From: Ruditapes philippinarum
Taxonomy: Eukaryota
Assembly: GCF_026571515.1 (NCBI RefSeq)
Contig: NW_026853658.1
Location: forward strand, 1-64,000
Length of the DNA: 64,000 nt
Reading direction: 5' to 3'
Below are positions 1 through 24,659 of this stretch, in pieces; the first letter of the stretch is position 1, and every line of letters begins with the position of its first letter. The notes beneath the pieces were generated by a model. The model saw nothing but the letters and a program-made list of their open reading frames with translations. It searched no databases and had not been told where the DNA came from. The translations under genes were made by a program, and so were the position numbers.

Positions 1-949
1 TCTCTAACATGAGATGCGTTGAGTTCCATCTCGTTGGCACATCTTGAATAAGTTCATGTTCAGGCACTTTGAACACTTTCTGTCTAATTTCTCATCTTTG
101 ATGTTATGGTTGTGGAATGTTTAAAGTGCCCAACAAGTTTTCTACTTTAAGCCGATATTTTACTAGCATTTGGTACATGTGTAGTTCAAGTGCGGAGTTT
201 TACGCACAACTGAAGCGTATGTCAAAAGCAGCCCGTCAACCCAATCCTCGCACTTTTCACTAGCACTTTGCATATTTCTCGCGTTATCATGTACACTCGA
301 CCCAACTTTTCTTTCTAATCTGAACTCAGATACACAGTCCTTCATTTTATTTGAGAGATTTTCACCGGTGTGTCTCTCTTGCATTTCGCGAGTCATCAAC
401 ACGTTAGATTCTATCATCCAGTCATCAATTAGATGGTGTTCAGTAATAGTCATGTAACTGTCAGTAGTGTTAGATGTCCATGTATCAGTGATGACAGAAA
501 CTGATTGACACTTTCTATGTTTTTGACAAGAGACTCTCTTTCGTCATCGTATCTCTTCTCAATACGCGATTTTACTGTGTTTCTACACGGGACTTTGTAC
601 TCTGGCACTACTCTCTGCATCAAATTAAGAAAACTTCACTTTCTACTATATACTTAAGGTATATAGTCCTTTACAATCATGTTTGCTATAGCCTGTGGGA
701 TTTTTTCACTTTGCGTTGTTTCTTTTTTTTATTTTTTTATTTTTGCGTATTCACAAATATGTCCATTGAGTGTTGTTTCTGTGCGTCAGAGTTTTTGTTT
801 TCAGAAGGATGCTTTAAGTGTAAATGATTTATCATGTTTGTAGTACCACCAGTATACGTCATTTCGCAGCTACATAATGTACATTTAACAGTATTGCTAT
901 CAGCACAGCGTTTGAAATATTTCCAGGCATTAGATTTTGCAGGCGGCAT
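1..949 (-). pseudogene. Frameshifted hAT transposase (BED zinc finger plus RNase H-like DDE domain)
   Basis: 737-949 encodes a BED finger (W..F..C..C...GGTTNM..HL..KH). Downstream minus-strand frames give TDTWT, RHTGENL, HDNARNM, GCF*HTLQL, LVGHFKHS and LIQDVPTRWNST. These frames are broken by stops and frameshifts. Confidence 0.9.
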
Positions 950-1530
950 TTTGACTCTTATGGAAATTTTAATATCTTATTCTAAGCAAAAACTTTATCA
1001 AGATATAAAAAAGAAATGATATTTCTGGATTTATATGCTTAAGGAAGAAAAGGGAGTTACTCTCCTTTATTGAGTAAAGAAAAACAACGTATAATTGGGT
1101 CTAATTACAACCTTTAATCTAACATTCATAATAACAATCCGGCCCTTTACTGTTTTCAAAACGGTTACCTTAAAACAAGTTTCGGCTACAAACTGTTACA
1201 CAATTAAAGGTCATTAAATATCATAAGAGGCCGAATGATGTAAGCGACACAGGTGTTCAATCCCATGCGCGTGTCAAACTGTTGATCACTCGTTATGTTT
1301 ACGATATAATTTTCGCACCTCTTCAAGGATGTTTTTATTGCATTTTACAGGTATTTATGAAGATACATGTATATCTCCGAATTTCTAAACTAATTGGACA
1401 CCAATCTCATTAAATCTAAAATAAATAGAAATTTTATTTTTTTTCCGAGTAATCGAATATCAATTTTGTTAACCGATATTCGGACGTTCGATCGAGTACT
1501 CGGTTAACCGAGTACTCGTTGCCATCCCTA
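1..1530 (-). mobile_element. hAT-superfamily (ZBED1/Ac-like) DNA transposon, 5' portion; continues beyond window start
   Basis: The minus-strand terminus TAGGGATGGCAACGAG at 1530 is a typical hAT end, flanked by TATATATA. A perfect 26-bp subterminal palindrome (cgagtactcggttaaccgagtactcg) lies at 1493-1518. Transposase remnants lie downstream. Confidence 0.9.
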
Positions 1531-1538
1531 TATATATA

Positions 1539-2231
1539 TTAATAATGATTACAATTATTTGCTCTGTAATTATTATATTTTGCGTGATTTTGAGAATTAG
1601 AAAATTTTACTCTGGCAGAAAATCTAGCTCTGAAATTCTGTTCATTCATTGCGCAAGTAATTGCTTCTTGTAAAGTTTTTGGCTTTTCTCTCATAAGTTT
1701 AAGTTTTAAATAATTATGCGCTAAATTATCCGTAAACAATTCTATTAACTGAAGTTCAATTAAACTATTATCTCCTAGTTTATAATTTTCATAAGCGGTT
1801 TCAGCACAATTAATAAATTTTTCCCCAAAAATTTGAACACTTTCTCCCAAATCTTGTTTTAAATTTCTCAAAAGATAAAATTCATGATGTAAATCTTTAA
1901 TTTCCCCAAATCTAGTACTTATTTCTTCTTTTAATTGTTCCCACGAATTACGATGATTATCACGCAAATATCTACATATAAAATCGCTTACAGTCCCTTT
2001 ACTTGATTGAAATGCGACTAATTTTATTTTATTATCATCCAAACCTTTTAAAATAGCATATTTTTCTATAGATTTTATCCAGTCATTAAAATATTTAGAA
2101 TTTCCATCAAAATTTTGTACTATTTCTGATAAACCCTGTGTACCTATGATAGTTGAAATATTGTTCAATTTATCTGACAAATTTTCAAAAATTGTAGCTA
2201 TTTCTTGATCTGACATCTTCAAAATTAGCAA
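1539..2231 (-). CDS. gag: Ty3/Gypsy-type retrotransposon Gag-like ORF, probably truncated
   Basis: 230-aa ORF with gag/capsid-like motifs (FDG..F.DW, W..LK..I..RF, L.Q..GESV..F, F..L, P.TL.EA..A). It sits directly downstream of an LTR and PBS, and stops 8 bp from the hAT end. Confidence 0.8.
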   Translation of the reverse strand: MLILKMSDQEIATIFENLSDKLNNISTIIGTQGLSEIVQNFDGNSKYFNDWIKSIEKYAILKGLDDNKIKLVAFQSSKGTVSDFICRYLRDNHRNSWEQLKEEISTRFGEIKDLHHEFYLLRNLKQDLGESVQIFGEKFINCAETAYENYKLGDNSLIELQLIELFTDNLAHNYLKLKLMREKPKTLQEAITCAMNEQNFRARFSARVKFSNSQNHAKYNNYRANNCNHY

Positions 2232-2324
2232 ATTACTGGTATATTAACGATCACTCACCTTTAATTTTCTGTTACAGGTACTTCGTTGTGTCCCGCTATC
2301 CAAAATCGTCGCTTCGACATCGCT

Positions 2325-2338
2325 GGTCTTAGGCGCCA
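2325..2338 (-). promoter_or_regulatory. Putative tRNA primer-binding site
   Basis: TGGCGCCTAAGACC on the minus strand just after the LTR end. The TGG is complementary to the tRNA CCA end. The priming tRNA was not identified. Confidence 0.6.
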
Positions 2339-2348
2339 AATCAACCGT

Positions 2349-2727
2349 TGTCGTATAACGGAGGAAGAACTCACGGATGTTACATACTTTTAATATACAA
2401 ATACAAACACACATGTGAACGAGTGGAATACCAAAGTCGAACTCCCCTACTCTGACATTTGAGAATAGTATATATAATATCAACCTGTCCTAAGGACATT
2501 TTATAATGTATATAAATACACACGTTTTAGAGTTACATATATTAATCATCCTGACATAAGGTCAGTCCGTATGCATCTCCTGCACTATAATACTCATAAA
2601 TCATGTCATGTTCCATAGTGCACATTAAGAAATAAAAACCCTAATATATGTATATACATGTTGACTTGTCATTCTTTTTTAATATAGCGTGTATGACTCA
2701 TTAGCCTGTGCAACCAGCTATACGACA
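2349..2727 (-). mobile_element. 5' LTR (~379 bp) of a Gypsy-like element
   Basis: Inverted termini TGTCGTATA...TATACGACA follow the TG...CA rule. On the minus strand the LTR is followed 10 nt later by TGGCGCC (PBS) and then the gag ORF. Confidence 0.8.
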
Positions 2728-3879
2728 CTGTTAAGAAGATATTTGAAATTTTATACATATAATATATATTTGTTAAGCCCATACAAATTGATAGATTATA
2801 GTGATGAGCCTTTGTTCAACTTATACGTAAGAATTCGGTGGCTGATTCAGCCAAACACCTGCCCGTTGCCTTGTTTTGCCTGAATATTAATCAATCTGAT
2901 GCCCTACATGTTTACATTACATTACTTGTCGCTGAATTTTTTTTTCTATAACATGATTATGAAAAATCAAAGATAATGACTTTTTGCAACTTGATGTGTT
3001 TACCAATACTTCACTACATGTGAAATTTGCTTTTCGATTTCAACTGATTAAAGACCGTTTACAAACCTTAATAAAATTGTATATGAAATCCTTAAACATT
3101 ACAATGTTCGTTGCAAGTAAAATATTCGAAGACGAACAGCTGTAAATTAGTTTATTGTTAATATTCTCTCACCTAGTGAATCCATTTTATCTGGAATCAA
3201 TCCGGTGCCATGAATCCAAATCAGTTCTGGAAATATTCAAAATCAACCCGGAGCGATTACATGTCGTGATATAACCTCGGATTAATATAATTCCACTTAT
3301 TAAAATATGCCCTTATTCACAAAAAAATATCACTTTTATTTAGAAATTCATAAATATTGACATAATTTTCAAATAAATGACCGACAAAAATGTTCTATGC
3401 TGAAGATTTATATCAATTTCCAAAGCGTTTCCACGTGCAAGGTTTAAAAAATATAAAGTAAAAACCGTGGACATGATTACGCCCATGCGATACCGGAAAT
3501 ATATACTATGTCAAATCAACACTTTCATCTTCCATGTACACTATGCTTTTCCGTAAAGATGCTCAAACTTTCGGTTTGCCCCGGAAATCTACATTTTTGG
3601 ATTTCTACAACTAAAAACTATGTAATATGTTTATATCAACATTTACAAACAGTTTTATTTCCCTTGAACTCAGCTCATAAATAAGATTTTAGATTAATTA
3701 GACTGTATGTCTTTTATATGGTTGTTTAATTTTGAAAATGATTTATTTGCTTGTTTATTTTATAACACCCCAACAGGTAGTAGTCGGGAAAATATTGATG
3801 ATCAATCTATATTTAAAATTCTACTTGATTATATGTTGAATTTTGAAAATATGTACAATAATAAATGTAATTTGATTAG

Positions 3880-6070
3880 AAAAAAGCTAGGCTTTGTAAT
3901 GCTAGGTTATATTAGAAAATGTTAAGAGGCTCTGTTTCTGAAAATAATAAATGTAAGCTAACCACTTGAGATTTTCAAACATAATTTAAGTCTATAAATG
4001 ATTGGGAGTCTGTATTTTGTCAAGCTGATGAAGATGTTTTATATCTTAACGATAGGTAGAACTTAATGTTCCTTTCACTGGTACTGAAATTATTAATGCT
4101 TGCAAATAGTTAAATGTTGGTAAATCAGCTGGGCCTAATAATTTACTAAATGAGTGTTTTAAGTTTGGTCACATTTTACAGGTTATAGTTTCTTTGTTTA
4201 ATCAAACGTTTGATATAGGTTATTTTCCATCAAGTTGGACAGAAGGTTTTATTGTACCTATTCATTAAAATTGGATATAGACCCTAACAATTATAAGGGT
4301 ATTACTCTTCTTAGCATCTTTAAGGAAACGTTTTACATAAGTAATAAATGAACAATAAAAATTGTGGGCAGGCGGGATTAAGAAAAATACAACATGAGCA
4401 CTATTTATTATGTCTTTATACTACAATGTACTATATGGTATTATAACACATTTATGTAATAATAAATAAAAGTTGTATGCTGTTTTTTGCTGTTGTTTTT
4501 TTTATTTCACTAAATCTTTGATTATTATGTGGTATAAATTAATAAAATTTGGAGTGAAAGGTTAAATGTTAAATATAATTAGGTCTATGTATGGGAAAGT
4601 TAGATCAAGAGTAAAATACAATACTACTATTAGTGAAGAGTATATATATTACTTGGGAGTAAGACAAGGCGAATCCCTTTAGCCGTTTTTATTTTCCATG
4701 TATTTAAATGATGTAAAAGAATATTTTATGTTAAATGGGAATAAAAGTAGTGATTTGCGTATTTTTAAGAATTTTTATTTATTGTTATATGCAGATGATA
4801 AAGTGATTTTTATGTCTGAAGGAGGGCTTATAAAAATGATTATTTGAAATATGTTGTGATGGGTGGACTGTGCAAAGACAAAGGTTTTGATTTTTAGAAA
4901 AGGGGTAGACTTAGACATAACTTCAATGATATTTATTGTAAAGATTAATAACTTGAAATTTCGAAACTGTTTACATATCTAGGCATTGATTTTTCTGTAG
5001 ACGGATCTTTTAATATGACTTTTGAAACACTTTTTGGACAAGTATTGAAGGCACTGTATAAACTTGAAAAAGCACTAATGAGATTTGCTTGTATGTTAGT
5101 TGAAAATAAACTGAATCTATTTGATAAACTTATTCTACCTTTTTTTAACTATGGATCACAAATATAAGGATTTCTTGATAATACTGAACAAGAATATATA
5201 TATTTCAAGTATTGTAAGCAGTTGTTAGGAGTTGAAACACAATTACAATTTCTTTTATCTATGGTGAACTAGGAAGGACATCAACAATGATAGCTTTTAA
5301 CGTTTTAAAATACTGGTTAAAAATGTTCCGTTAAGTAGTACAAAATATATCAAAGTTGTGTGTGTCATATTTAGAACTTAAACTAAATTCAATGTCCTGG
5401 GATGTCTGTTATGTTTTTGTTACAATCTTCAATGAAGTATGGGTGTTGAAAAGTTCAGGAAATCTTAATCACATTTTAGTACTGCTTCATATAGATTAAA
5501 AGTAGAAACTGGTAGATGGCATAAACCTGAAGCAATTCCTTTTAATGAAATGAAATCAAAATTGAAGATGTATCATTAGAATGTCCACAGTACAATGTTT
5601 GGAGAAAATGTTTATATATTAAATATTTTTTGGAAAAAACCAAATATACTAACATTTATTGAACTGTTAACATCTCAAAATGAAAATATTATCAATGTGT
5701 ATCTTAATTAATAATCTTATGTTTGAATTAAGAACAAATGTTGAATACTCGTAAATTATATTTACCTAGGAAGATAAATGTAATGGTTTTTAATTGATAG
5801 CATTATGTAAAACATGTTCTTTGTTAAAACCTTGCTGTAATATGATTATTCTGTTAATATTTAACCAAACGTTTGTCTCAAATATGCAGTAAATGTTTAA
5901 TATATGTACATATTTAATGTCTGTCTGTCTGTATGTATGTTTTTATGTATTTATGTTTGTATGTATGTTTGTATGTATGTTTGTATGTATGTTTGTATGT
6001 ATGTTTGAATATATGTTGTGTACTCTTGGGTATAATACCCACATGTATTTTGTAATAAAATCTGAATCTT
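3880..6070 (+). mobile_element. Decayed non-LTR retrotransposon (LINE; CR1/L2-like), RT pseudogene plus 3' UTR
   Basis: RT motifs LGVRQGESL*PFLFSMYLND (~4652-4712), LLLYADD (~4780-4800) and FTYLG (~4970-4985), with many stops and frameshifts. A tail-like aataaaatctgaatct lies at ~6054-6069. The 5' boundary is approximate. Confidence 0.85.
5918..6007. repeat. Compound (TGTA/TGTT) microsatellite with 12-bp higher-order unit gtatgtatgttt
   Basis: Directly visible. It generates the spurious ORFs 5893-6192 and 5943-6188. Confidence 0.95.
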
Positions 6071-6261
6071 TATTATTTTGTCCGTGGGCTTTCGTGAATA
6101 AGTTTCTGCACATTAGAACCTCATACTTAACCATTACATCTTCAAATAAACATGTGTCAGACAGAATAGCTATTGTTAACTCGTGCATTTAATCCTATTT
6201 AACATATATTATGTTTACCCTTTGTTACTTTAGCAACTAACATTCATTAATCTTATTTCAG

Positions 6262-9200
6262 ATATATTTGGACCTGCGGTTACAAGTGATAAAAAATGTT
6301 TGGCTTTTGATAAATACAGTGAAACGTTTTGGCAATCCTGTAGTTTACCATATAAAAGTGTCTGCAAAACAAAAAGTAAATATGCTTAGCAACTTTCAGT
6401 ATTATTCCAATTCATGCGAAAAATTCAATATATCTATTAACAATTAGTTCCCACCTGCCTGTCATTTTTTCCGATAAAGCTTTGCCAACCAATCAAAACA
6501 TCCATTACATAGAAGCAGTTTTACAAAATAATCAACATCCACAAAGTCGGACAAGTCGTTAATTTTACGTTACAAAAAGAAATTTACTTGGAACTGAGGA
6601 ACATAAGATTCTATCATTGTTCGTATCTGAGCATCAATTTCAGGTTATATATTTAAAGCAGCACGCCTCCACATTTATCCTTATTTTCAAGAAAATTTTG
6701 AAACTGTATTTAAAAATAACATATTGTGAAATGATCAAAGAAAGTAAATTAACACATTGCAAACGGTACTTACAATAATTATTTTAAATTACCAAAAAGA
6801 GGGCAAAATATGCATAAATATCCCTTACTGCGTTAGTAACGCAGCAGTAGAAATATGATAATCAATACTGCAAAATCAGTCATTCGCAGCACATAAGATA
6901 GTACTTGAATTTTGAATCTTTTTATCATTCTTACAATCTTAGTTATCTTTCCAAAGTTGTATTGTCTTAAAATATTTTAGCTCATCTGGAGGCATGCATC
7001 TTTAAAAAAATATGATGTATGTATATGTATTCGTAATGTCTAGAAATCATGAAAACACTTTTTTCTCTCTCCAACTGTTAATAGGAGATACTGATACACT
7101 TTCAAGAATGCAATCTAGCGGCTACTGAATGGCTGATTGAAAGGTCATGAGAAGGAAGGTTATTGGTGACTACCAGTAATTAAAAAGCATTAAATATGTG
7201 CTGTTTGAACCAGACTGACCAATACTGGGAAAGGCGCAAGTCGAATCCAATTTTTTTAAACTGTGTACGAGTCCAATGGAATCAGAATCAGTTTTTTTTA
7301 AGAATCCAATAGAATTAGTTCTGTATAAGTCCAATATAATCAGTATCATAACCTATATTCACTGCTTCAATTATTTGCAAATATATACTTTGCAGTACTT
7401 TGTTCATTTGAGTACAATTTATATTGTATACGAACTCATATGGACTGTGAAAATGAAAACTTGTAAAGCAATAACATTGTTTGCATCTTTTTTTAATTCT
7501 AAGATGGAACATACATAAGTGGTTTCGCAGGACAACAATCGTTACTTTCATGGGCATCATATATCAAGCAGTGTTTTAAAAACATCTGTTACCCAATCAC
7601 TTTGGAAGATGTCCAAAACAGACCACATCAACTTTACGAGCTTGCAACAAGCTTAACATGGACACGTCTTACACAAAGCACTGTAATTTATGGGTTCAGA
7701 GGTGTGTTTGTATGTTCATTAAAACATCGTGGCAAACATTTTCCAACAAGAAGATAATTGTATATATAAATAGACTTGGCTGATCAATTATAAACGATTT
7801 CTGTATCGATTTTGCTTTAATGATTAGAAAATTGCAGTTCAAACATACTCGTATGTATAGCAGGTAAAGCAGGCGTCTGTTTAGTATAATCATGTTTTGT
7901 TCAGTACTACTCAATGCATCTGCAAATGAAATTTTTGATTTCCTTAAAAACAGAAAATGACTTAAATCGCAATAGTTTTATAGTTGATAACATTTGTTTT
8001 TTAATCTTATCATTTTTTGTTACATATTTTATCATATGATCATTTGTACGAATACACGCGATCGAATGATCGACTAATGAAAAACTATTTGACAAAGTCC
8101 TTTCATATTTTTTATACAAATTGATCGTACCGTCATTCACTTCTGTTAAATTCATGTTTATTCACTAAGAGTAATATAAGTGTGCATCTAAGGCCATCCA
8201 ATCCGGCACCATCATAAATGATTTATAGCTTCTGAAATAATTATAATCATTTCTCATTTTAATATAAAAACAACCTGGCAGTATTTTTTAATTTTATAGA
8301 AAGACACAAATCATTCTTTGGTCAAAATAAAATCATATGGTAGTTGACAATATTTTTTAGAATGATATGATTATCACTTTATATATTTTCATAACAGAAT
8401 TCAACACAACAATGAACATATCATACGGCTATCTTAAAAGACAAGGTGAACATGTAAATATGCTTTTTACAGAAGACGGTAATGTAGCTAAACGAACCCT
8501 TTTTGAATCACGTGAGTACATTAAAATGAAAGGATTACGGGAGTTATACATGTTATATAATTTTTATGATATAAAATGTGATGAGAAGAAATTTATTAAA
8601 ATGTTCTTTTTATTTGCTAAGCTGTTAATCAAATTACAACAAACTGTATTTCAATTATGCGTTACAGCGATAAAGCACGATTTCGTGTGAATGTGAATGA
8701 CAAGACCAGTGTAAATGTATAATTGACCTTTAACCATATTCGGTACACGCAATTTTGGATTGTTAAGCTATCATCAAACATAAAATATTGTTAAAGCGAA
8801 ACTACAGTAATGCTTCAGAATTATTCTATTTTGTTTTAAAATGATATGAAGTCCATATTGTGATATGTTTGAAATTTAGCTGATGTAAAAGAATCATCAA
8901 CATCCGTATCTCGTGAATCATCAACATCCGTATCTCGTGAATCATCAGCATCGAAAACCTCCATAGGGTCATTCGCATCAGAGACAACGAGCGTTCCGAT
9001 TAAGGAATCACAGATGGGTCAAAGTAAAATTACCTTTATAATTTACGAAATGATAGAACATTTTCTTTCTTGTGTTAATATTTAGACATAGGTTATTCAT
9101 TTATGAATATTAAAATGCATATCTTTCGGCTGTAGCATCTATCATAATAACATTTAATGAACTGATATTTTGTTGAAAGTGTTGTTATGTCGTTCGATTT

Positions 9201-11790
9201 TGTAATTATTTTACCTGGCTTGATATTTTTTTTATTAAAATACATTCCTTGGGACGACTTTCGGGTTTAATGAAGGTTTATTTTGTTCAGTTTTGTTTAT
9301 TGTAGCTGACTTACATGTCGATATATTTTGCAACTTATGTGATGATACTTACGCAGCCCCTAAGGTGACATTCTCGTTTTTACGAAAAATTAATTCGTTT
9401 TTACGAAATATTAATTCGTTTTTACAAAATATTAATTCTTTTTTACGAAATGTTATTTCATAATTGCGAAATAATAATTCGTTTTTACGAAATATCAATT
9501 CGTTTTTACGAAATATTAATTTGTATTTACGAAATATTATTTCGTAATTACTAAATATTAATTCGTAAAAACGAAATCTTATTTCGTAATTACGAAATAT
9601 AATTCGTTTTTACGAAATCTTATTTAAGGTCATTGTGAGCTTGACAAAGAACCTACTAATCTCACTTATGGGTCATTTACAAGCCTATATCAACCTTGCG
9701 ATTATGAGCCGAATGGTACTCAAAATTATTATATTTAAGTGAACTGGGTTATTTGAGTGGGAAGTCATTCTCTATCCAAAATGGCCTCTTTTCCCCATTG
9801 TCAAAAACATATTCCTATCAGCAATGTTTTAGTATTTGTGGCAATTAATCAGAAAAACAGAAACATGCTATATTATTCCTTTCTTTTATCATATATTCGT
9901 ACATTAGTAAAACTAAATGGGGGGGGGGGGGTCTCCGGCCTTTCACTAATCAATCAATTTAAAACGAATAATTCCTTACATTTAATGTATGGGTACCGTG
10001 CGATCATAAAAACATAATATTTCATTTCAAAACTCAATAATTTGGACAAAACGAAAAAGAAAACCATGTCCGTGTTCTTAACTAAATTTTCCTAGCGCGT
10101 GTACTATCACGACTGTGGCTCAACGCGACTGTTCTAGTTTATATACCATGATAGTGTTAAGTTAACAAAACTTGGGGAAAACAAAAATTTATATTACATG
10201 CCTTATTTTTTTCAGTCAGGAACTAAGTTTTGAGGCCTTATTTATAACTATTTCCAAAACTTTTTGAAACCCTAAAAAGATTTAATTCGTTTTTACGAAA
10301 TATTATTTCGTATTTACGAATTATTATTTCGTAATTACAAAATTATATTCCGTTAATACGGAATAATATTTCGTAAAAACGAATTAATATTTCGTAATGA
10401 CGAATTAACATTTCGTATAAAAGAATTAATATTCCGTAAAAACAAATTAATATTTCGTAATTACAAATTAATATTTCGTAAAAACGAATTATTATTTCGT
10501 AATTACGAATTATTATTTCGTAAAACGAATTAAGTTCCGGAAAAAAAGTGTTGAAAATGTCACCTTAGGGGCTCCGTAGATACTATAGTAAACATTGACG
10601 TTAATGTGAAAAACAACTCATTGTCGTCATACGAACTTAAAAATCATTCATTCGGCGTTAACTTTGGTTAATTTAAGGTCTTAGTCTACTGCTATAGCTA
10701 TTCAAAGTTCAGATCTGGTGCTAAAAACAACACTGTATTTTACTTATTAATAATATACATTAAAGTTGTAAACAACAAAATGACTTGAGTATATTTCAAC
10801 GAACCTTGCTGTTTTATTTATTGATGTCGTCATGTCATTATATGTCATTAAGATGTTTATTTATCTCAAATCCTGCTTAAAACGAAGGTATTGTGTGGCT
10901 CCATAACTTTGTATAAGGAAACATAGGGGCACATGTATACTAAAATAAAACAAAAACTAACGTATGGTCACAGACTGAAGGCACTTTTCTGAACTTCATT
11001 TGCATAAAAATCGCTTGGACCCGTAAAGTATAACCTGATCCAAGATACAACTTCCTTTTATCGACTAAACTGAATGAATAATAGTCTAGTCTATCCATAG
11101 TAAATTGTGTTTTCAGGCTCCTCTATAATCGTTCCGGTAGGTGTTTCGTCTATTGCTGTCACTGTCGTTGTGCTAGTTGTGGTACTCGTCGTATTAAAGA
11201 GACGGTATTGTATTTCTATGAATACTTGCCTATTTTACATGTTTAGCAAATATATTAAAAGACAATTATAATTTTCTAAAGTGAAAATTTTAATCAAACC
11301 ATTGTAAATTGTATGTGTCTATGTGATGACATAGGAAGTTTTTGTTTTTACTATTATACAGAAACTGTTATTAATGAAAATGAAAAAAATATATTAATGA
11401 ATGTAAACATGAACTAACCAGTTAAGTTTAAATGATGAACACAAATAAAAAGGGGTATTAACAAACTTGTGATACAGATTCAATCTAAATAACGTATTGA
11501 AAGAATTTATTTTCCTTTTCAGTGGCAAAATCCCACCCACATGTTTCAGAAATGTTCAATCTGATTCTTCAGAATATGCCACACCAGAAATTCACCGAGT
11601 TGATCAACATGACTACGCTTCTTTAGGATTAAATCAGGGTCAAGTTAGTGGGATAGAACTTCCTTCAACGACCTACACTGATTATAATGCCATTCATGGA
11701 AATAACGAACATACGTATTCTGAATTAGAAACACATGCAGAGGCATCCAACACTGATGCAAACATTGAAAGTCATTATTACAGATACTAG
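6262..11790 (+). CDS. Receptor A (5'-partial): CTLD1 C-half, CTLD2, stalk, TM, short ITAM-like tail
   Basis: Phase-compatible GT-AG exons: 6262-6375 (KKCLAF..TFWQSC..SVC), 7504-7701 (SW..QC..YP..TWTRL..VIY), 8398-8511 (YGYL..), 8880-9023 (Ser/Thr stalk), 11117-11204 (TM IIVPVGVSSIAVTVVVLVVVLVVLKRR), 11523-11790 (tail). AATAAA at 12083. Exons 1-4 were not found in the window. Confidence 0.85.
6657..7001. mobile_element. Non-autonomous TTAA-flanked DNA transposon (Kolobok-like MITE)
   Basis: TTAA|AGCAGCACGCCTCCA ... TGGAGGCATGCATCT|TTAA. Related sequence recurs at ~42731-42990 and ~41959. Confidence 0.7.
9352..10576. mobile_element. Foldback-type non-autonomous DNA transposon with TA target duplication
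   Basis: TIRs TA|CGCAGCCCCTAAGGTGACATT ... AATGTCACCTTAGGGGCTCCG|TA. Subterminal arrays of a ~21-bp unit (ttcgtttttacgaaatattaa) lie at ~9374-9625 and, largely inverted, at ~10283-10535. Confidence 0.9.
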
Positions 11791-14456
11791 ATATGAACAA
11801 GAGCGAAACAACATGCGTATGGCACTTTGTAAATGAAAGCTTTCAATTAAGTATAATCATAAGTTATGTACGTTGTAGACGTAGTGAACAGGGATATATA
11901 ATCTACATGAGATAAATTTAGTTACGGATGTCGACCTCCAAGTCTGTATTTCCGTTATGCATATTTATATTAGCTTTAAGACAAAGTCTGTTAACAAAAT
12001 GTTTTTACAATGTCACATTTTTTATATTTTACAAAATTTATTCTTTAAGTTTTTTTAAATCGTAAAGAATCTTTTTTAACCCAATAAATGTTTTCATTTT
12101 CATACTTTGGTGTCTTTTTCAGTGTTAACGTTTCGCAAAAGTCATCACGTATATCTTAATGTCTCACCAGACAGTCTTCAAAATGATTAAAAAGATTTAT
12201 AAAAAAGAATGCTTTAATCTGCCAAACCTAGAATGAACGCTTCCTGCATTTTAATTTCTCTTTATCTTCGTTGTAGCTGCATATTCATCGAGGTAATTCA
12301 GTGAGTTTCGTGACAATATATTACATGATGCATTTCTATTGTTTTTTATTTGAAATGCACGATAGTGGAAAGTTATATTGTGACTATTCATTATCAGCAC
12401 AAAACCTCAACATTAAGGTTAAGAAATTGAGCAAATATCAAACTTTTTTTCTAGCATTCGTTATATTTGCTATGTCTAAAATAATAAACGATACAAATAA
12501 CTACACTATTCAATAAACTATTGTAAATAAAACATTTTCGTGTAGAATTCAATTTTCGTGACAAATTGAGCATATCAGATCTTTCCACGCTTTTTGTCTT
12601 AAGTAAAATATATCTCTAATTTAATAAAAAAAAGTTTAAAGGTAAGATAAAATCCCTCTGCTTACTAAAATAATGACATTGAACAGGTCTTTTACATAGA
12701 AATTATCAAAATCATATTAGGCAAGTCCCATGCATATTGAATTAGTATTGAATCTACACAAATATAGTATTTTATTTACATATCCAACATAAGAACGGTT
12801 TACATCTAACGTAGTCATTTTTCAGTGGCGCGCCTATCGCGCTATATTTGTATATAGCATTTTATTTAATGTTTTTTCATACGAAAGTGTGATTGTTTTT
12901 ATTAAAAGGGTTTATAACAATCCTGTGTCATGGTTAATGCGGCAAATATTGTTTAAATATATGATATAAGCATAAAATTTATTGAGAAAATCAATATTCT
13001 CACATAGAACAGCAAAATATATTATAATGAAAATCAATGTTTACTGTTCACAAATAGCATATTCAATTCATCGAACCACTTATCGTAAACGAAATTGCAA
13101 AATTTCCTTTGTTAAAAGCACTATTTACATAAAAATACTAAATTACGTCAAAAAACATAAAACATTTATAATGCTATTAAAAACATCATACACATTTTTT
13201 ACAAAAGCAAAATATACAGCAAAACAAACTATTTATCAAACATTTGATCTTTTGTAATATTAATACACAATTATAGCTGTCAACATATTAGCAAATTTAT
13301 GTAACTATATTTCTCTATCTTTTATATAAAAGATATCTAAATTATGGCAAAGAAAAACATTTCTGAATATTGATGAACAAGCTATATAGAAATAACTGAG
13401 TATCATTTGCTATATGGTTATTTGCTTTTGCTGTTTATGAATAGTCTTAAAATATAAGAAACTGGTAAAAAAGCATTTAATTCAAAAACAACAAAATGAA
13501 ATAACATGAAAATTGCAGACTCGGTTTCATTGAGCACACACATGAGGGATAATAAAAAAGTGCAACATCGATCATGTTTCCTAGCAAAGCACCGATTTTA
13601 GCGGTACTCAGTGTTAAACTTTAGAAAATGTTGGAATCAATGATCGCAAAGGATCACTGGTTATAAGAAAGAATATTAAATAGAGAAAATGACAGGTGCA
13701 ACATCTAACGCTAAAACAAAATTTATTTTTCAGTTCCTTATCCAAATTCATGAAGTAAAACAAAGCATCGAATAAACATCGACAACTGAAAAAAAGAAAA
13801 TGTTAAGTGTTTTTGAATTAGTTTAATTCAAATAAAACAATTATTCGTCATCAAACAAACAATCAATCAAAGCCTTCAAAAAGAGTGCCAGCTTTTTGCA
13901 TGGGAGTGTTTTCCGATGACTCTTGAAAAGTATACATGATGAAAGCATTTATATGTAATATGTCGTTATTGTTAGCATACAATAGTGACAACAGTTTATT
14001 TTATATAGTTACATACATAGAACTATAACGAGAAACATATTGTACCAAAAAGGCTCTAAACATTTTAAAATCTGAATGTTTCAACAAATGAATTGACGTT
14101 CTTAATAAAATAAAAGCCCTTTAAAAAACTATTAAAAACTGTTTTAAAAAACAGATTTACGGTATGGGAGTTGTCCTTCTTTTGATACAAAGTCATTTTG
14201 TTCTTTTAAAAGGGAAAATGTTAAATGTTCAAATTTCCCTGTGGAAGGGTTTGGGGAATCATAGGTTTTGATCAATATTTCTGCAATAGATTAATTTTAG
14301 GTTAACGGTTTTGTTTTTTTAATGTAGAATATTAAACTTCTTTTACGGTTGTACTTAAAATGCAACAAAACACATCAATGCAGTCCATTTGATATCGAAA
14401 CTAAATAACCTTATTATGTACATTATAAAAAGTTAGTTTTATCGTAGTTTACTTAC

Positions 14457-14978: not shown

Positions 14979-15294
14979 TATAGAAAAGAACTTACAGACA
15001 GAAATTAAAATATTAAATAGTGTAAGGAGTACATGTTGAGAGTTCATAAACAACAAGACAATTTTCAATATAGGTCTGCATGTACACAATTATATTTTCA
15101 TTATGAAAATATAAACACAATTTAAGTAATGGAACATAGGGGTTCGAATTTAAATAAATAACAGAGATGCCAATATGCGATTGAACAAGTATACAATTAT
15201 ACAAGTAAGTTATCTAAGTACGTCAGTCTTACTTAATTAAAAGTCTTATCTTATTTAAATCAGAACAGATTAACTGTATGTCATTTGCACTTTT

Positions 15295-16295
15295 TCATAT
15301 GTTGGAGTGTCTGTGGGAATTTCGGTTACTGTTATTAGTGTCGTCGCAAGCGTTATTATCATTGTGATATTAAAGAGACGGTAGTATACTTTTATAATTA
15401 CATTGATGTTGGAAGTACTTATATTTCTATAAACTGTTATATTCTCAAAAGTTTCATTTAAGTTTACATCTCTTTTTTTCGTTTTGGTTAAAACCATTAT
15501 AATTTTAATTTCTTTCAACGCAAACATGTCATCAAATCCAATTTGAAATGCGATGTTTGTCTATTTTTAAAATCTCTTAACACAAGCTCTTAAATAAGTG
15601 TGTGTAGTTTTAAATATGGAGAACATTTCACATAAGCAAAACCAAAATAGTTATAAAATAGAAAACATGCTTTTTGTAAAAAATACTTTGTTGCTTTTTT
15701 CAGGAGGAAAATTCAAATGAAGTGTTTCAGAAAACCCGAATCTAAATGTTCTGCATATATTTCCAAGGAATTACATCCCAACTTTAAAAATGATAAGCAT
15801 GCCTACGAAATGTCTTTATGTTCTCCTTATGATCAAATTGATGATTTAGGACTCCCATCAGAACGTTGCTCTGATCATGAACGAACTGATAATGTCATAA
15901 GCGGACACACCTACCTTATCTTTGAAAAACATACATGGGAATCAAAGACCGATGATAACATTGAAAAAAATACGAAAACAGAAACAAGCAATGTTTATAA
16001 CACACTGAACTCAAATGGAAACAACAATGGGAGTAATGAATCTGGAAAAACGTACGATACAACTGAGAAAGTAGCCATGAAAACGAAAGCTCAGCACGAT
16101 AAGAATATAGGTGACGATGCGACAGAAAACACATATATTCATACGGGTAGTAGACTAGTTAAGAAAGTCAAAAGTGACAACGTATACGGTGTTCTTAACA
16201 ATGTTGAAGGTGAAAACGATGATGTTGATACAAGAAATAAAAAGTGCCAGTTTAATGGAGGAGACACGTACAGTCATACCATGAAGAAATATTGA
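15295..16295 (+). pseudogene. Receptor B: orphan TM exon (acceptor lost) plus intact Tyr-rich cytoplasmic exon
   Basis: TM VGVSVGISVTVISVVASVIIIVILKRR ends at a phase-2 donor (15380/15381). The terminal exon 15704-16295 is homologous to the D/E/F tails (SPYDQI, HTYLIFE, NVYNTL, TYDTTEK, DNVYG, DTYSH). There is no usable acceptor for the TM exon: the nearest AGs are followed by an in-frame TAA at 15271. Confidence 0.75.
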
Positions 16296-22495: not shown

Positions 22496-24659
22496 AAAAT
22501 CCAATTAAACAAAATTTTGAAAACACGCTGCATGTTCTGAAATCTTCAAAGAGAGGGTCAATCCTTTTTTCTGTAAAACTCATTTATATGGTTAAATTCG
22601 TCCTGCAAGTGAATTGATAAAACAGTAAATCAACATTTAAAACATCTTGCACGGCGTTAATAAAATTATCCCAAAAATATTCTCACTCAAACATATGGTG
22701 CTTAGCAAAAGTTGAGTAGTATAACTGCATATTTTAAATGATAAACAATAATCTAAGCATGGTGACGATAAATCATACAGTAAAATGACAGAGTTGACAA
22801 CCTTTAATAAGTATCCCAGTAGAAGCAGACAAAGTACTTTGGTTTATTGTACATGATAACGAGAATATTTATATACATTCATATTGTGTTTTTTGACATC
22901 AATAGTAGATAAGTGAAATTCTACGAAAAACAAACTCGATCAATCTATTAAAAAACATTTCTTATTTTGAAGAGTTGCAAAACTATCAAAGCCGATGTAT
23001 TGTGTTTAATAAAGCACATAGTAAAACGTCATAATTTAACAGTAATGAGCAACATTTTCAATTAAGAATTGCTTATTTAAAATTCTAGAGCAAACTATGT
23101 TAAAACTTTAGGCTATCAACGCCATTTCATGTAAACTATTTAGACTTATCAATTTTGACTGAAACTTATTTGCATAAGCCTAAAATACGTACAAACTGAA
23201 CTTGTTAATCTTTTTTTGTTTATTTAATTATTTAACTTATTTTTATTTTTGTATTTTTTGTGAATTTTGGAATTAAATTTCAACGAGTTGGCCCTGCAAA
23301 CAGTAATCTCGCAAATTATACCACAAACAAACAAAAGTTCTGTTGTTATATATTTGTTTTTTTTTTTTCAAATACATAACTGAAGAATACAATTAAATTA
23401 AATAATTCTAAATAATTGCGAAATACGAGCAAACATAAGATTACGGATCTATAGTGCAAGAAATTCCAGACTGTAAATTTACAGCTTATACAATTTGCAC
23501 AAAATAAGGAATGTACTTAAGCAAAATGCTTGTCTCTAGGAAATATTCCACAGTGTCACTAAACATATCATTTAACCTCTTTTACACTTATACAAATCAT
23601 GGATGTTGACATTGTTATGTTGTTGCTCGATGACTGCATTTTCAGGAATAACTACCAAATAAAGATTTGAGTTAACCAAATTTTACGTTACGGTACATGT
23701 AAAAACACACTAATATTGTTTTGTTTCAGACTGCCTTGCAATTTTTGAGTTCTGATTTCTCGTAAAAGAACCATCATGTTATTGACTTTATCCCGTTGTT
23801 TTACTATCGTTCTAAAAAATGCATAGTTTGTCGATGAACGTTATTTATACATAATTAAAAAGATCTAGGTCTGATAATAAATTTTATTACTGGTGACTGA
23901 TTTTTTTCTTGGCTACTCAGACTACCACTGGCCGTACATCATATTCGGAAAGTTTTAAGTAAACATGTATGTTACTCAACATAAATTGTGATACCTAATA
24001 CTCATTAAATTTAGAATTATAAAATGTCTATTTAACGAAATACGTAAAACTGTTACCTTTTAAACATAACGATAGATAACTATGATGGCAGTCGCTCCAC
24101 CAGAGTCTATAATTACTTTCAAAAATTAAGCACTCTTCATTGTCCTTATTTCTTCCTACATTCATTTCTGAAATTCAAACAAACCTCAGAAAAAATGTAG
24201 TAGACGTTTGATATAATAATATCCAAATATTATTCAAAAAATTACAAAGATCGACATAAGACATTCAGCAGGACAGTGGAATTTACCCAATTTCCTGCTG
24301 GCAAGTCATTTTGCAGGACATTAATATTTTACCGAATGATCTGCTAGTAGGACATTCGGCAGAAGTGGATGATTGTTTGCACTGACAGTACCGACGATCA
24401 ACAGGCTCAATCAAAACGAGCCTTTTGTTGTTTTGGACTTCCTTTAGGGATTTTTATTTTCTCTATTTAACAGAATATCCTGCTTACTTTTGAATGTTCA
24501 TAATCATTAATACAACTTATAGTCATATTATGACTATACGTTACAACACTCAAAATAAAAAGAAATACTAAGGTGAAATGTTATACCAAAGAGCACATTC
24601 CTAACAAATAAGCAGTCACATAATATACATACATGTAATGCAGAACATAAAAACTTTTG

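What the first reader, a model, noticed from the sequence alone, without database searches (positions are those of the whole stretch)
11523..11790. Receptor A has a different, short tail with a canonical ITAM: possible activating member of a paired-receptor set
Seen: A's ~88-aa tail does not align with the ~200-aa tails of B/D/E/F beyond the RGK...C start. It contains YNAI-x7-YSEL, exactly the ITAM spacing YxxI/L-x6-8-YxxL; the first Tyr also fits the ITSM pattern TxYxxI. It also carries DYASL and EYATP. The long tails carry ITIM-like SxYxxI/L motifs (SPYNEI, SEYNTL, SPYDQI). Established: ITAMs recruit tandem-SH2 kinases (Syk/ZAP70, Shark) and ITIMs recruit SHP/SHIP. Inference: homologous ectodomains are coupled to different signalling outputs through terminal-exon replacement.
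Basis: partly seen in the sequence, partly recalled or inferred. Interest (0 to 1): 0.78.

Follow-up and report, generated by a model that had tools for sequence, protein, structure and literature searches.

The report
Clam receptor tail with ITAM-like motif
A Manila clam cell-surface receptor gene ends in a short inner tail with two tyrosine signals spaced like the "on switch" of vertebrate immune receptors; the tail is a shortened version of the long tails of its sister genes, and its signalling role is plausible but untested.

Summary
Window 11523-11790 (+) is the last coding exon of an expressed, spliced Ruditapes philippinarum gene, LOC132737462 (XP_060580734.1, "uncharacterized").

One claim is wrong. 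The 88-aa tail does align with the long tails. It matches the first ~90 aa of the B-type tail (BLASTP 1e-11), and its second ITAM tyrosine is the family-invariant H-x-Y-x-x-x-E. So A's tail is a truncated, diverged long tail, not a foreign exon.

Three short-tail loci exist in the genome. With two database fragments, 5 of 5 short tails carry an ITAM pattern and none an ITIM pattern. Of 10 long tails, none has an ITAM pattern and 9 have an ITIM-like one. The exact A motif is kept in 4 of 5; the C12995 copy has Tyr->His. These are only about two independent lineages.

The stalk/TM/short-tail module is shared (88% nt) by two genes whose ectodomains are about a quarter identical, so 3' module exchange did occur.

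A Syk/ZAP-70-like gene and an SHP2 gene are present. No orthologue outside this species was found. Function is untested.

The scan has also noted ITAM/ITIM-like tails in other receptor clusters of this genome.

The parts
6261..6375 (+). Ectodomain exon of gene A (P0001 residues 163-200, the end of the first lectin-like/WSC-containing domain). Its 5' boundary is not fixed to the base.
   Evidence: Joint 6375>7504 (GT..AG) in contigs of runs X1 and X3. The translation is a substring of P0001.
7504..7701 (+). Ectodomain exon (P0001 about 201-266, second lectin-like domain).
   Evidence: Joints 6375>7504 and 7699>8396 (cut +2). Matches P0001. 57-62% identical to exons of long-tailed paralogues on C8549, C2028 and C2145:135738.
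8396..8511 (+). Ectodomain exon (P0001 267-304).
   Evidence: Joints. Substring of P0001.
8880..9023 (+). Ser/Thr-rich stalk exon (P0001 306-352). An alternative joint to 8915 is seen in run X3.
   Evidence: Joints 8511>8880, 8515>8915 and 9023>11117. Substring of P0001. 75.5% nt identity to the stalk region of A'.
11117..11204 (+). Transmembrane exon (SSIIVPVGVSSIAVTVVVLVVVLVVLKR). No charged residue in the membrane span.
   Evidence: Joints 9023>11117 and 11203>11522 (cut +1), both GT..AG. Substring of P0001. The only helix with pLDDT above 50 in the AF2 model is 364-381.
11523..11790 (+). Terminal coding exon: the 88-aa cytoplasmic tail plus the TAG stop. This is the finding.
11572..11586 (+). 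EYATP. The Tyr is conserved as S-x-Y in B-type long tails and in the C12995 short tail.
11611..11625 (+). DYASL (a YxxL). It aligns with AYEMSL of the B-type tails.
11683..11727 (+). ITAM-like motif YNAI-HGNNEHT-YSEL. With the preceding T-D it also fits TxYxxI. The second Tyr is the family-invariant HxYxxxE.
11791..12444 (+). 3' untranslated region. It is transcribed at least to 12015, and DNA homology with A' runs to 12444.
   Evidence: Run X1 record 5 reaches 12015. BLASTN 11023-12444 versus C2145:116466-117871 gives 88.1%. No remnant of the distal long tail was detected.

Best explanation
The stretch is the last coding exon of an expressed Manila clam gene (LOC132737462). The gene encodes a type-I membrane protein with a lectin-like/WSC-containing ectodomain, a Ser/Thr-rich stalk, one TM helix and an 88-aa Tyr-rich tail.

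Shown:
- The tail is a truncated, diverged derivative of the B-type long tail of the same family. The proximal ~90 aa are kept. The distal ~110 aa with its further Tyr motifs is gone.
- The ITIM-like SPYDQI is lost (it reads NQGQV in A).
- A Tyr not present in the B-type tails (TDYNAI, against TDNVI in B-type) sits seven residues upstream of the family-invariant HTYxxLE. This creates YxxI-x7-YxxL.
- This short-tail form is a small clade of three loci. It shows moderate purifying selection.
- Its stalk/TM/tail module also sits on a second, very different ectodomain (A').

Inferred:
- After ligand-driven clustering, Src-type kinases phosphorylate the two tyrosines.
- The doubly phosphorylated motif docks the tandem SH2 domains of the clam Syk/ZAP-70-like kinase.
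- This gives an output different from that of the ITIM-bearing long-tail relatives, which would recruit SHP2.
For: Gene, splicing and expression:
- GT..AG joints appear in contigs of two runs. One contig spans stalk, TM and tail. Raw RNA-seq reads of run X21 lie on the tail exon.
- The tail is identical to the NCBI protein XP_060580734.1.

Homology with the long tails:
- BLASTP against the B tail gives 1e-11. The match to P0007 runs through TM and tail.
- H63, Y65 and E69 are invariant across five tails.

Short-tail clade:
- Only three short open frames (105, 96 and 99 aa) appear among the 10 and 9 own-genome matches.
- A and C12995 stop at the same aligned position.
- dN/dS is 0.31 for A versus A' (dS 0.096) and 0.37 for A versus C12995 (dS 0.70).
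- By my count of the differences, the coding part of A versus A' is about 96% identical. The block that includes the intron and UTR is 88% identical.

Motif partition:
- An ITAM(6-8) pattern is present in 5 of 5 short tails and in 0 of 10 long tails (also none at x6-12).
- An ITIM-like pattern is present in 0 of 5 short tails and 9 of 10 long tails.
- By my count, the block 45-71 that holds the motif is the best-conserved part of the short tails: 17 of 27 columns are invariant in 5 sequences.

Effectors encoded in the genome:
- C560 carries SH2, SH2 and tyrosine-kinase exons on one strand within 16 kb. The best PDB hit of the first SH2 exon is the ZAP-70 tandem SH2, followed by SYK.
- An exon on C10217 matches PTPN11 (SHP2) at 7e-43.

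Precedent (passages read):
- The oyster receptor CgIgR has an ITAM in its own tail and co-precipitates with CgSyk (PMC6994640).
- Oyster CgCLec-HTM and CgCLec-TM1 signal through a hemITAM and Syk (reviews PMC13027682 and PMC12842671).
Against: - The motif rests on four residues in a tail with 8 Tyr in 88 aa. 1.6% of shuffles give it, or 3.5% with the wider spacing.
- One of the two tyrosines is ancestral and is also present in every long tail. So the ITAM may be a by-product of a single added Tyr.
- The reference C12995 copy has lost it (HLHSDV). It fits the pattern only through another pair, YISL-x6-YDQI. That may simply show how easily such tails produce the pattern (2.6% of shuffles).
- The 5-versus-10 partition has only about two independent lineages on the short side. 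A and A' are near-identical. P0004 and P0011 are close to C12995.
- No Pfam family matched the tail at E up to 10, so Pfam's ITAM model did not match either.
- The acidic residue before the first Tyr is at -1, not at -3 as in the D/ExxYxxL form quoted in PMC6994640.
- YxxL/I also fits the YxxPhi endocytic sorting signal typical of lectin-type receptors (recalled).
- Tissue of expression, phosphorylation and binding are all unknown.
Confidence: 0.4

Rival explanations
1. The tyrosine motifs act one by one, and the ITAM-like spacing is incidental. They would be single SH2/PTB docking sites, YxxPhi endocytic or sorting signals, or a TxYxxI switch-type motif. The short tail is then simply a reduced version of the family tail. 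It keeps the core HxYxxxE site and a few others.
For: - The second Tyr and its H/E context are invariant in short and long tails alike.
- EY.TP and DY.SL are also conserved between A and C12995.
- The C12995 copy lost the second YxxL yet keeps an open frame and the TDYNVI site.
- Shuffles give an ITAM pattern in 1.6-2.6% of trials.
- No Pfam family matched the tail.
- Lectin-type endocytic receptors commonly use YxxPhi (recalled).
Against: - 0 of 10 long tails, each with 6-11 Tyr, show an ITAM pattern, while 5 of 5 short tails do.
- The x7 spacing and all four key residues are kept between A-type and the P0004/P0011 type at 58-60% overall identity.
- The ITIM-like site was lost in both short-tail lineages by different changes.
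Confidence: 0.35
2. The short-tail receptor is a decoy or dominant-negative form. It binds the same or similar ligands but lacks most of the signalling tail, so it dampens or diverts signalling by long-tail relatives. This is comparable to short-tail isoforms of other receptors.
For: - The distal ~110 aa, which hold most of the conserved Tyr motifs of the family, are missing. No remnant is detectable downstream.
- The TM segment has no charged residue for adaptor pairing.
Against: - The remaining 88 aa are under purifying selection (dN/dS 0.31-0.37). Five tyrosine positions are conserved between A and C12995. That is more than a pure decoy would need.
- A's ectodomain is only 56-62% identical per exon to long-tailed genes, so shared ligands are not evident.
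Confidence: 0.15
3. The short tail is a decaying or neutral truncation with no function of its own.
For: - The family is large and fast-evolving. It includes broken members: the tail on C8549 is cut to 122 aa, and B has no annotated protein.
- The C12995 copy has a Tyr->His change in the motif.
Against: - The gene is transcribed and correctly spliced.
- The stop is at the same position in lineages separated by dS 0.70, and dN/dS is below 0.4.
- The module was retained after transfer to a second gene, which has four annotated isoforms.
Confidence: 0.07

Closest known systems
CgIgR of the Pacific oyster (ITAM-bearing receptor that recruits CgSyk; PMC6994640, passages read)
   Same: - A bivalve type-I membrane receptor with an ITAM-pattern in its own cytoplasmic tail.
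- A Syk-type kinase with two SH2 domains exists in the same animal group. A candidate is found here on C560.
   Different: - CgIgR has five Ig domains and a YxxL-x9-YxxL motif. The clam protein has a lectin-like/WSC ectodomain and x7 spacing.
- CgIgR-Syk association is experimental, while nothing is tested for the clam protein.
- No sequence comparison with CgIgR was made here.
Oyster transmembrane C-type lectins CgCLec-HTM and CgCLec-TM1 (hemITAM, Syk-ERK; reviews PMC13027682 and PMC12842671, passages read)
   Same: Bivalve lectin-type membrane receptors that signal through a tail YxxL and Syk.
   Different: - They carry a single YxxL (hemITAM), while the clam tail has three Yxx[LI], two of them at ITAM spacing.
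- Pfam does not call a C-type lectin domain in P0001. The only hit is a sub-threshold WSC match (E=0.002, 18.7 bits against a cut-off of 27.8).
Vertebrate paired receptors whose activating member has an ITAM-like motif in its own short tail: CEACAM3 against ITIM/ITSM-bearing CEACAM1 (PMC5112662, abstract in the search listing only). FcgammaRIIA/IIB is recalled.
   Same: - A short tail with an ITAM-like motif against a long tail with ITIM-like motifs.
- The members belong to one clustered, fast-evolving family.
- There is evidence of exchange of gene parts between members.
   Different: - Ectodomain identity between the short- and long-tailed clam genes is 56-76% per exon. This is lower than I recall for vertebrate pairs.
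- The ectodomain fold is different.
- This would be convergent, not homologous.
Hydractinia Alr family (PMC9546547, passages read)
   Same: - A lineage-specific invertebrate receptor family in which some members have ITAM and others ITIM patterns in divergent tails.
- Syk/Shark and SHP homologues are present in the genome.
- The motifs are defined as Yxx[I/L]x(6-9)Yxx[L/I] and [I/L/V/S]xYxx[I/V/L], the same patterns used here.
   Different: - The Alr proteins have Ig-superfamily ectodomains and come from a cnidarian.
- Their tails are too divergent to align. In the clam the ITAM-type tail can be traced by homology to an ITIM-type tail.

Membership tests
ITAM (immunoreceptor tyrosine-based activation motif) | Two Yxx[L/I] units separated by 6-8 (at most 9-12) residues | tested here: met
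   YNAI-x7-YSEL at tail residues 54-68, window 11683-11727.
ITAM (immunoreceptor tyrosine-based activation motif) | Lies in the cytoplasmic part of a membrane protein | tested here: met
   It lies downstream of the TM exon 11117-11204 and is spliced to it. The order is signal peptide, ectodomain, stalk, TM, then tail in P0001. Residues 364-381 form the TM helix in the model.
ITAM (immunoreceptor tyrosine-based activation motif) | Acidic residue upstream of the tyrosines (the D/ExxYxxL/I form quoted in PMC6994640) | tested here: inconclusive
   The first Tyr has D at -1 and no acidic residue at -3. The second Tyr has E at -3 (reading).
ITAM (immunoreceptor tyrosine-based activation motif) | Both tyrosines, the +3 L/I and the spacing conserved in relatives | tested here: inconclusive
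   - Kept in 4 of 5 short-tail sequences: A, A', P0004 and P0011.
- Broken in the C12995 copy (Y->H, L->V).
- No orthologue from another species was found.
ITAM (immunoreceptor tyrosine-based activation motif) | Match to Pfam's ITAM profile | tested here: not met
   No Pfam family matched any of 5 tails at E up to 10. This is a weak test, because the profile is short and built on vertebrate adaptors (recalled).
ITAM (immunoreceptor tyrosine-based activation motif) | A tandem-SH2 kinase of the Syk/ZAP-70/Shark type is available in the organism | tested here: met
   - C560 has SH2 exons at 172292-172483 and 178719-178865, and kinase exons at 184156-188250, all on the + strand.
- The best PDB hits are ZAP-70 (7e-6) and SYK (2e-4) for the first SH2 exon.
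- For a kinase exon the best hits are PYK2, SYK and ZAP-70 at about 1e-8.
ITAM (immunoreceptor tyrosine-based activation motif) | Dual tyrosine phosphorylation and binding of the tandem SH2 domains | not testable with these tools
   This needs biochemistry.
Paired activating/inhibitory receptors | Very similar ectodomains joined to tails of opposite type | tested here: inconclusive
   - A versus long-tailed genes: 56-62% identity per exon.
- A' versus the long-tailed gene on C10388: 66-76% per exon, with an unrelated TM and tail.
- The ectodomains are related but not near-identical.
Paired activating/inhibitory receptors | The inhibitory partner carries ITIM [I/V/L/S]xYxx[I/V/L] | tested here: met
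   9 of 10 long tails carry S.Y..[IL]; E does not. 0 of 5 short tails carry it. This is a pattern match only.
Paired activating/inhibitory receptors | The activating partner has a charged TM residue to bind an ITAM adaptor, or has its own ITAM | tested here: inconclusive
   There is no charged residue in the TM segment SSIIVPVGVSSIAVTVVVLVVVLVVL. The tail has its own ITAM pattern.
Paired activating/inhibitory receptors | Genes clustered in one region | tested here: met
   A, B, D, E, F, A' and the gene at 131-139 kb all lie on contig C2145, which is 154,845 bp long.
Paired activating/inhibitory receptors | Opposite signalling outputs | not testable with these tools
   This needs reporter or haemocyte assays.
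C-type lectin receptors with hemITAM (Dectin-1 / CgCLec-HTM type) | A C-type lectin domain recognised by profile | tested here: not met
   - Pfam gives no Lectin_C hit for P0001 or P0002 at E up to 1. WSC scores 18.7 bits, below its cut-off of 27.8.
- The Atlas feature search lists WSC/Lectin_C clusters at scores of only 0.79-0.87, which are leads and not tests.

The most novel reading that the evidence does not exclude
A clam-specific lectin-like receptor family has convergently built a paired-receptor system.
- An ITIM-type long tail was converted into an ITAM-type short tail. This took truncation, loss of the ITIM-like tyrosine site and gain of one tyrosine beside an ancestral one.
- The resulting stalk/TM/short-tail cassette is portable. 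It has been copied onto a gene with a very different ectodomain (A'), whose closest relative keeps a long tail.
- Ligand recognition and signal polarity would then be shuffled independently, with Syk and SHP2 as the opposing readers.

A bolder and less likely extension: the ectodomain-less B TM and long-tail exons, 3.5 kb downstream of A's stop, serve as an alternative 3' end of gene A. One ectodomain would then be made with either tail.
Probability: 0.22. Interest if true: 0.7.

Novelty: new variant of a known kind. Interest (0 to 1): 0.5.

Why it matters
Whether invertebrates balance activating and inhibitory receptors the way vertebrate NK and myeloid cells do is still open. Bivalves have huge, fast-evolving receptor families whose signalling is almost unknown.

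Here the ITAM-type tail can be traced by sequence homology to an ITIM-type tail in the same family, and the short-tail cassette has demonstrably moved between genes. That gives a concrete system with few variables:
- Two tyrosines, Y54 and Y65.
- One lost ITIM-like site.
- A Syk-like locus and an SHP2 locus in the same genome.

With these, one can test how signal polarity evolves.

If the motif turns out not to bind Syk, the finding reduces to a truncated tail variant in an uncharacterised clam gene family. That is ordinary.

Tried and rejected
Tried without result:
- Orthologues in other species.
  - phmmer of the A tail against 1.84 billion representatives gave 7 hits at E<=0.001.
    - Four belong to the family: P0001, P0002, P0004, P0007.
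    - P0003 and P0005 were read and are unrelated repeat proteins.
    - P0006 was not fetched.
  - Word-indexed searches:
    - P0001 residues 360-470: 2 of 2,312 candidates.
    - P0001 whole: 2 of 3,488 candidates.
    - P0007 tail: 3 of 880 candidates.
    - All hits were R. philippinarum.
  - The metagenome scan matched 206 stretches by pattern and none was confirmed. The tool warns that records near the window's own genome may be left out.
- Structure. AF2 on P0001 without an alignment gave mean pLDDT 35 and is unusable. No fold search was run.
- Remnants of the distal long tail downstream of A's stop. tblastn gave nothing better than E=2.5. blastn found only the coding block already known.
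- Pfam on the tails gave no family.
- The ectodomain of the C12995 short-tail gene could not be found. The contig ends about 2.8 kb upstream of the tail exon, and only the TM exon is seen.
- Papers.
  - No paper holds the locus or protein accessions.
  - Searches for molluscan or bivalve paired ITAM/ITIM receptors returned only vertebrate work or unrelated hits.
  - PMC12943528 matched only an author's surname.
  - Supplements were closed and not requested. Figure S2 of PMC6994640 and the SI figures of PMC9546547 may hold motif alignments that I did not see.

Considered and rejected:
- "Foreign terminal exon" for A: rejected by the homology.
- "Pseudogene": rejected by splicing, the conserved stop position and dN/dS.
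- A Fisher-type test on 5/5 versus 0/10: not used, because the sequences are related.

Not tested:
- Whether the B TM and tail exons are spliced to A's exons. The single read-laying run covered 6100-12090 only.
Full report
WHAT IS THERE

The window is the first 64 kb of a 154,845-bp contig (C2145) of a 1.41-Gb genome. Protein look-ups identify the organism as the Manila clam, Ruditapes philippinarum.

Positions 11523-11790 (+) follow an acceptor AG at 11521-11522. The split codon CG|T joins the upstream exon, which ends at 11204 and is followed by GT. Read that way, the exon encodes 88 residues and a TAG stop. The 88 residues are identical to residues 383-470 of XP_060580734.1 (LOC132737462, "uncharacterized protein", 470 aa).

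- EYATP at 11572-11586.
- DYASL at 11611-11625.
- TDYNAI at 11677-11694.
- YNAIHGNNEHTYSEL at 11683-11727, which is YxxI-x7-YxxL.

IS THE GENE REAL?

I laid two contig-type runs and two raw RNA-seq runs on 6100-12090. Contigs of X1 and X3 skip introns with GT..AG ends at these joints:
- 6375>7504
- 7699>8396
- 8511>8880 (or 8515>8915)
- 9023>11117
- 11203>11522 (cut +1)

One 686-nt contig joins the stalk exon, the TM exon and the tail exon, and runs to 12015. X1 and X3 are not on record as RNA, but spliced contigs can only come from transcripts. Raw RNA reads of X21 also lie on the tail exon, at a depth of about 3 with 4% of the run read.

Each exon, translated on its own, is a substring of P0001.

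A high-depth X3 contig over 11537-11699 carries E->D and R->Q changes like the paralogue A', plus I->V. None of the differences shown lies in 11683-11727, though 44 rows were not shown.

THE TAIL IS NOT A FOREIGN EXON

It does.
- BLASTP of the A tail against the B tail (window 15705-16292) gives 34 of 90 identities, E=1e-11, over the whole length of A. The all-against-all search gave 3.4e-11.
- The NCBI protein P0007, a B-type gene on contig C87, aligns with P0001 continuously through the last ectodomain exon, stalk, TM and tail (40% over 214 aa, E=9e-28).
- In a five-tail alignment, C7, H63, Y65, E69 and Y86 of A are invariant. So the second ITAM tyrosine (HTYSELE) is the family-wide H-x-Y-x-x-x-E motif: HTYLIFE in B, HTYFVLE in D and F, HDYFILE in E.
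- A versus D, E or F is not significant by BLASTP at 1e-5. A belongs to the B-type branch.

Compared with the B-type tails, A shows these changes:
- It keeps S-x-Y near the start (EYATP against AYISK).
- AYEMSL has become DYASL.
- The ITIM-like SPYDQI is lost (NQGQV).
- It has TDYNAI where the B-type tails have TDNVI.
- It stops about 5 residues after the conserved NIE.

The distal ~110 residues of the long tails are absent. These hold the YNTL, YDTT, Y.H., NVYGV and TY.H motifs. No trace of them is detectable downstream of the stop.

A SMALL SHORT-TAIL CLADE

Searching the whole genome with the A tail gave 10 matches. Searching with the C12995 tail gave 9. Both find the same three short open frames:
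- A.
- A', at C2145:116950-117213 (94% aa identity; P0002, LOC132737469, four isoforms with the same tail).
- A copy on C12995 at 23465-23737, minus strand (53%).

A and the C12995 copy stop at the same aligned position.

Two 48-aa fragments from JGI/IMG contigs (P0004, P0011) are 58-60% identical to A and close to the C12995 copy.

dN/dS for the tail is 0.31 for A versus A' (dS 0.096) and 0.37 for A versus C12995 (dS 0.70). This is moderate purifying selection for a disordered tail.

Within the short tails, the block E45-H71 that contains the motif has 17 of 27 columns invariant in five sequences. It is the best-conserved part (my count).

CONSERVATION OF THE MOTIF

- YNAI-x7-YSEL is identical in A'.
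- P0004 and P0011 have YNAI-x7-YSDL.
- The C12995 reference copy has YNVI-x7-HSDV, so the second unit is broken. That copy still fits the pattern through another pair, YISL-x6-YDQI.

I scanned every tail in hand with the patterns used in the literature: Yxx[LI]x6-8Yxx[LI] and [SIVL]xYxx[IVL], as quoted in PMC9546547. The scan gives a clean split:

| Tail type | ITAM pattern | ITIM pattern | TxYxx[IV] |
|---|---|---|---|
| Short (5) | 5 of 5 | 0 of 5 | 5 of 5 |
| Long (10) | 0 of 10 (also none at x6-12) | 9 of 10 (E lacks one) | 0 of 10 |

I dropped one ITIM-like hit in L006 (VKYECV). It lies in intron-encoded residues of the open frame that I had passed whole.

Caveats on this split:
- The short tails are one clade with about two independent lineages, so it is not a statistical test.
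- Shuffles of single tails give the ITAM pattern in 1.6% (A) and 2.6% (C12995) of trials, and in 0.7-1.0% for the long tails.

No orthologue outside this species was found by any search.

MODULE EXCHANGE

A and A' are 42% identical overall, but the identity is very uneven.
- TM and tail are nearly identical.
- The stalk is moderately similar.
- The ectodomain is about a quarter identical (my count from that alignment).

At the DNA level, only two blocks of the 13.5 kb around A match the 20 kb around A' in the same orientation:
- 8745-9037, the stalk, at 75.5%.
- 11023-12444, which covers the TM exon, intron, tail exon and 3'UTR, at 88.1%.

A third match, 6657-6776, is a 120-bp inverted hit in a high-depth repeat.

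The closest relative of A''s ectodomain is a gene on C10388, with 66-76% identity in six exons. That gene has a different TM exon and a ~155-aa tail of another type. tblastn with the A, B, D and E tails and the A and A' stalk-TM finds nothing there at E<=0.01.

A's own ectodomain exons are 56-62% identical to those of B-type long-tailed genes on C87, C8549, C2028 and C2145:131-139 kb.

So the short tail arose within the B-type lineage, and its 3' cassette was later placed on a different receptor gene 105 kb away. It does not support the specific claim that A's terminal exon was replaced.

EFFECTORS

Contig C560 carries two SH2 matches (172292-172483, 178719-178865) and three tyrosine-kinase exon matches (184156-188250) on one strand.
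- The first SH2 exon hits the ZAP-70 tandem-SH2 best (7e-6), then SYK (2e-4).
- A kinase exon hits PYK2, SYK and ZAP-70 about equally, near 1e-8, which does not discriminate.

I take C560 as a Syk/ZAP-70-family candidate.

Contig C10217 carries two SH2 domains followed by phosphatase-like open frames. One exon matches human PTPN11 (SHP2) at 7e-43.

HOW IT MOST LIKELY WORKS

Shown:
- An expressed type-I membrane protein.
- A tail derived from the long tail by truncation.
- Loss of the ITIM-like site, and a Tyr at ITAM spacing from the ancestral Tyr that the B-type tails lack.
- Purifying selection.
- Cassette transfer to a second gene.
- Candidate reader enzymes encoded in the genome.

Inferred:
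- Clustering-dependent phosphorylation of Y54 and Y65.
- Docking of the Syk-like tandem SH2.
- An output distinct from that of the long-tail relatives.

I put this at about 0.4. The main rival, at 0.35, is that the tyrosines act singly as SH2 docking, YxxPhi sorting or TxYxxI sites, and the spacing is incidental. A decoy role is at 0.15 and neutral decay at 0.07.

COMPARISON WITH WHAT IS KNOWN

- ITAM-in-tail receptors that bind Syk are described in oysters. CgIgR has the motif YxxL-x9-YxxL and co-precipitates with CgSyk (PMC6994640, passages read).
- Oyster transmembrane C-type lectins use a hemITAM with Syk/ERK (reviews PMC13027682 and PMC12842671, passages read).
- Families with both ITAM- and ITIM-bearing members exist in the cnidarian Hydractinia (PMC9546547, passages read).
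- In vertebrates, CEACAM1/CEACAM3 is the closest functional parallel (PMC5112662, abstract from the search listing).

The clam case differs in three ways:
- Its ectodomain. Pfam gives no Lectin_C call and only a sub-threshold WSC hit. The Atlas gives leads to WSC/Lectin_C clusters and a 60-member molluscan cluster.
- The ITAM-type tail can be traced to an ITIM-type tail by homology.
- The cassette transfer is demonstrable.

I found no paper naming these loci and none on molluscan paired ITAM/ITIM receptors. The library does not cover most subscription journals.

Earlier notes of this scan report ITAM/ITIM-like tails in two Ig-type receptor clusters elsewhere in this genome. Such motifs are therefore not rare in this clam.

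VERDICT

- It is a new variant of a known kind: an ITAM-like short-tail branch of a lineage-specific lectin-like receptor family.
- Interest is 0.5.

Noticed in passing
window 1-6260, and P0001 residues 1-160: The first ~160 residues of the NCBI protein for gene A (signal peptide and most of the first domain) are not encoded anywhere in the window, although the window starts at base 1 of the contig. No 100% match turned up in the whole-genome search either; the best was 58% on another contig. A 508-nt RNA contig carries 195 nt upstream of 6261 that lie outside the stretch I laid. The contig probably begins inside an intron of gene A, and the annotated 5' end comes from transcript data.
   Followed up: partly
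window 15293-15381 and 15705-16292 (receptor B): B consists of a TM exon and a long-tail exon. No annotated protein was found for it: 3 of 880 candidates matched, none from this locus. Compared with the 83%-identical paralogue on C11813, a 6-bp gap removes the AG acceptor just before the TM exon. B lies only 3.5 kb downstream of A's stop, in the same orientation and the same splice phase. It may be a dead remnant or an alternative 3' end of gene A.
   Followed up: partly
window 9239-10564: The 2.1-kb intron between A's stalk and TM exons holds tandem and inverted copies of a repeat that translates as FRKNELIFRN... in both orientations. RNA-seq reads cover it at modest depth with many loose ends, so it behaves as a dispersed repeat.
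   Followed up: no
window 6700-7100: This is a very high-depth element in all four runs (summed word depth up to about 1,900 in X3), with many odd joints and loose ends. It sits in the intron between exons 6261-6375 and 7504-7701. An inverted 120-bp match (84%) lies next to the stalk exon of A'. It is probably a highly expressed or very abundant repeat.
   Followed up: no
window 163-453 (-), 1539-2231 (-), 4110-5164 (+): There are open frames that look like transposon remnants: a hAT-like dimerisation region, a gag-like 230-aa ORF, and reverse-transcriptase-like pieces. They lie upstream of the first A exon present in the window. This is judged by eye only.
   Followed up: no
G000:C10388:59081-68200 and G000:C856:9587-14500: Two near-identical genes are the closest ectodomain relatives of A'. 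They carry a third tail type (~155 aa) with repeated [NE].Y[ND][KT]. and ETYD motifs. That tail has neither an ITAM nor an ITIM pattern. It is not matched by the A, B, D or E tails at E<=0.01.
   Followed up: partly
G000:C8549:9592-9852 (P0013): A B-type long tail is cut to 122 aa by a stop (…GKTKNVRNS). This is a second, independent shortening of a family tail. It keeps SPYDQI and has no ITAM pattern.
   Followed up: no
G000:C5835:52997-56873: Three strong SH2 matches lie within 4 kb on one strand. This is an unusual SH2 triplet or a tandem gene array.
   Followed up: no
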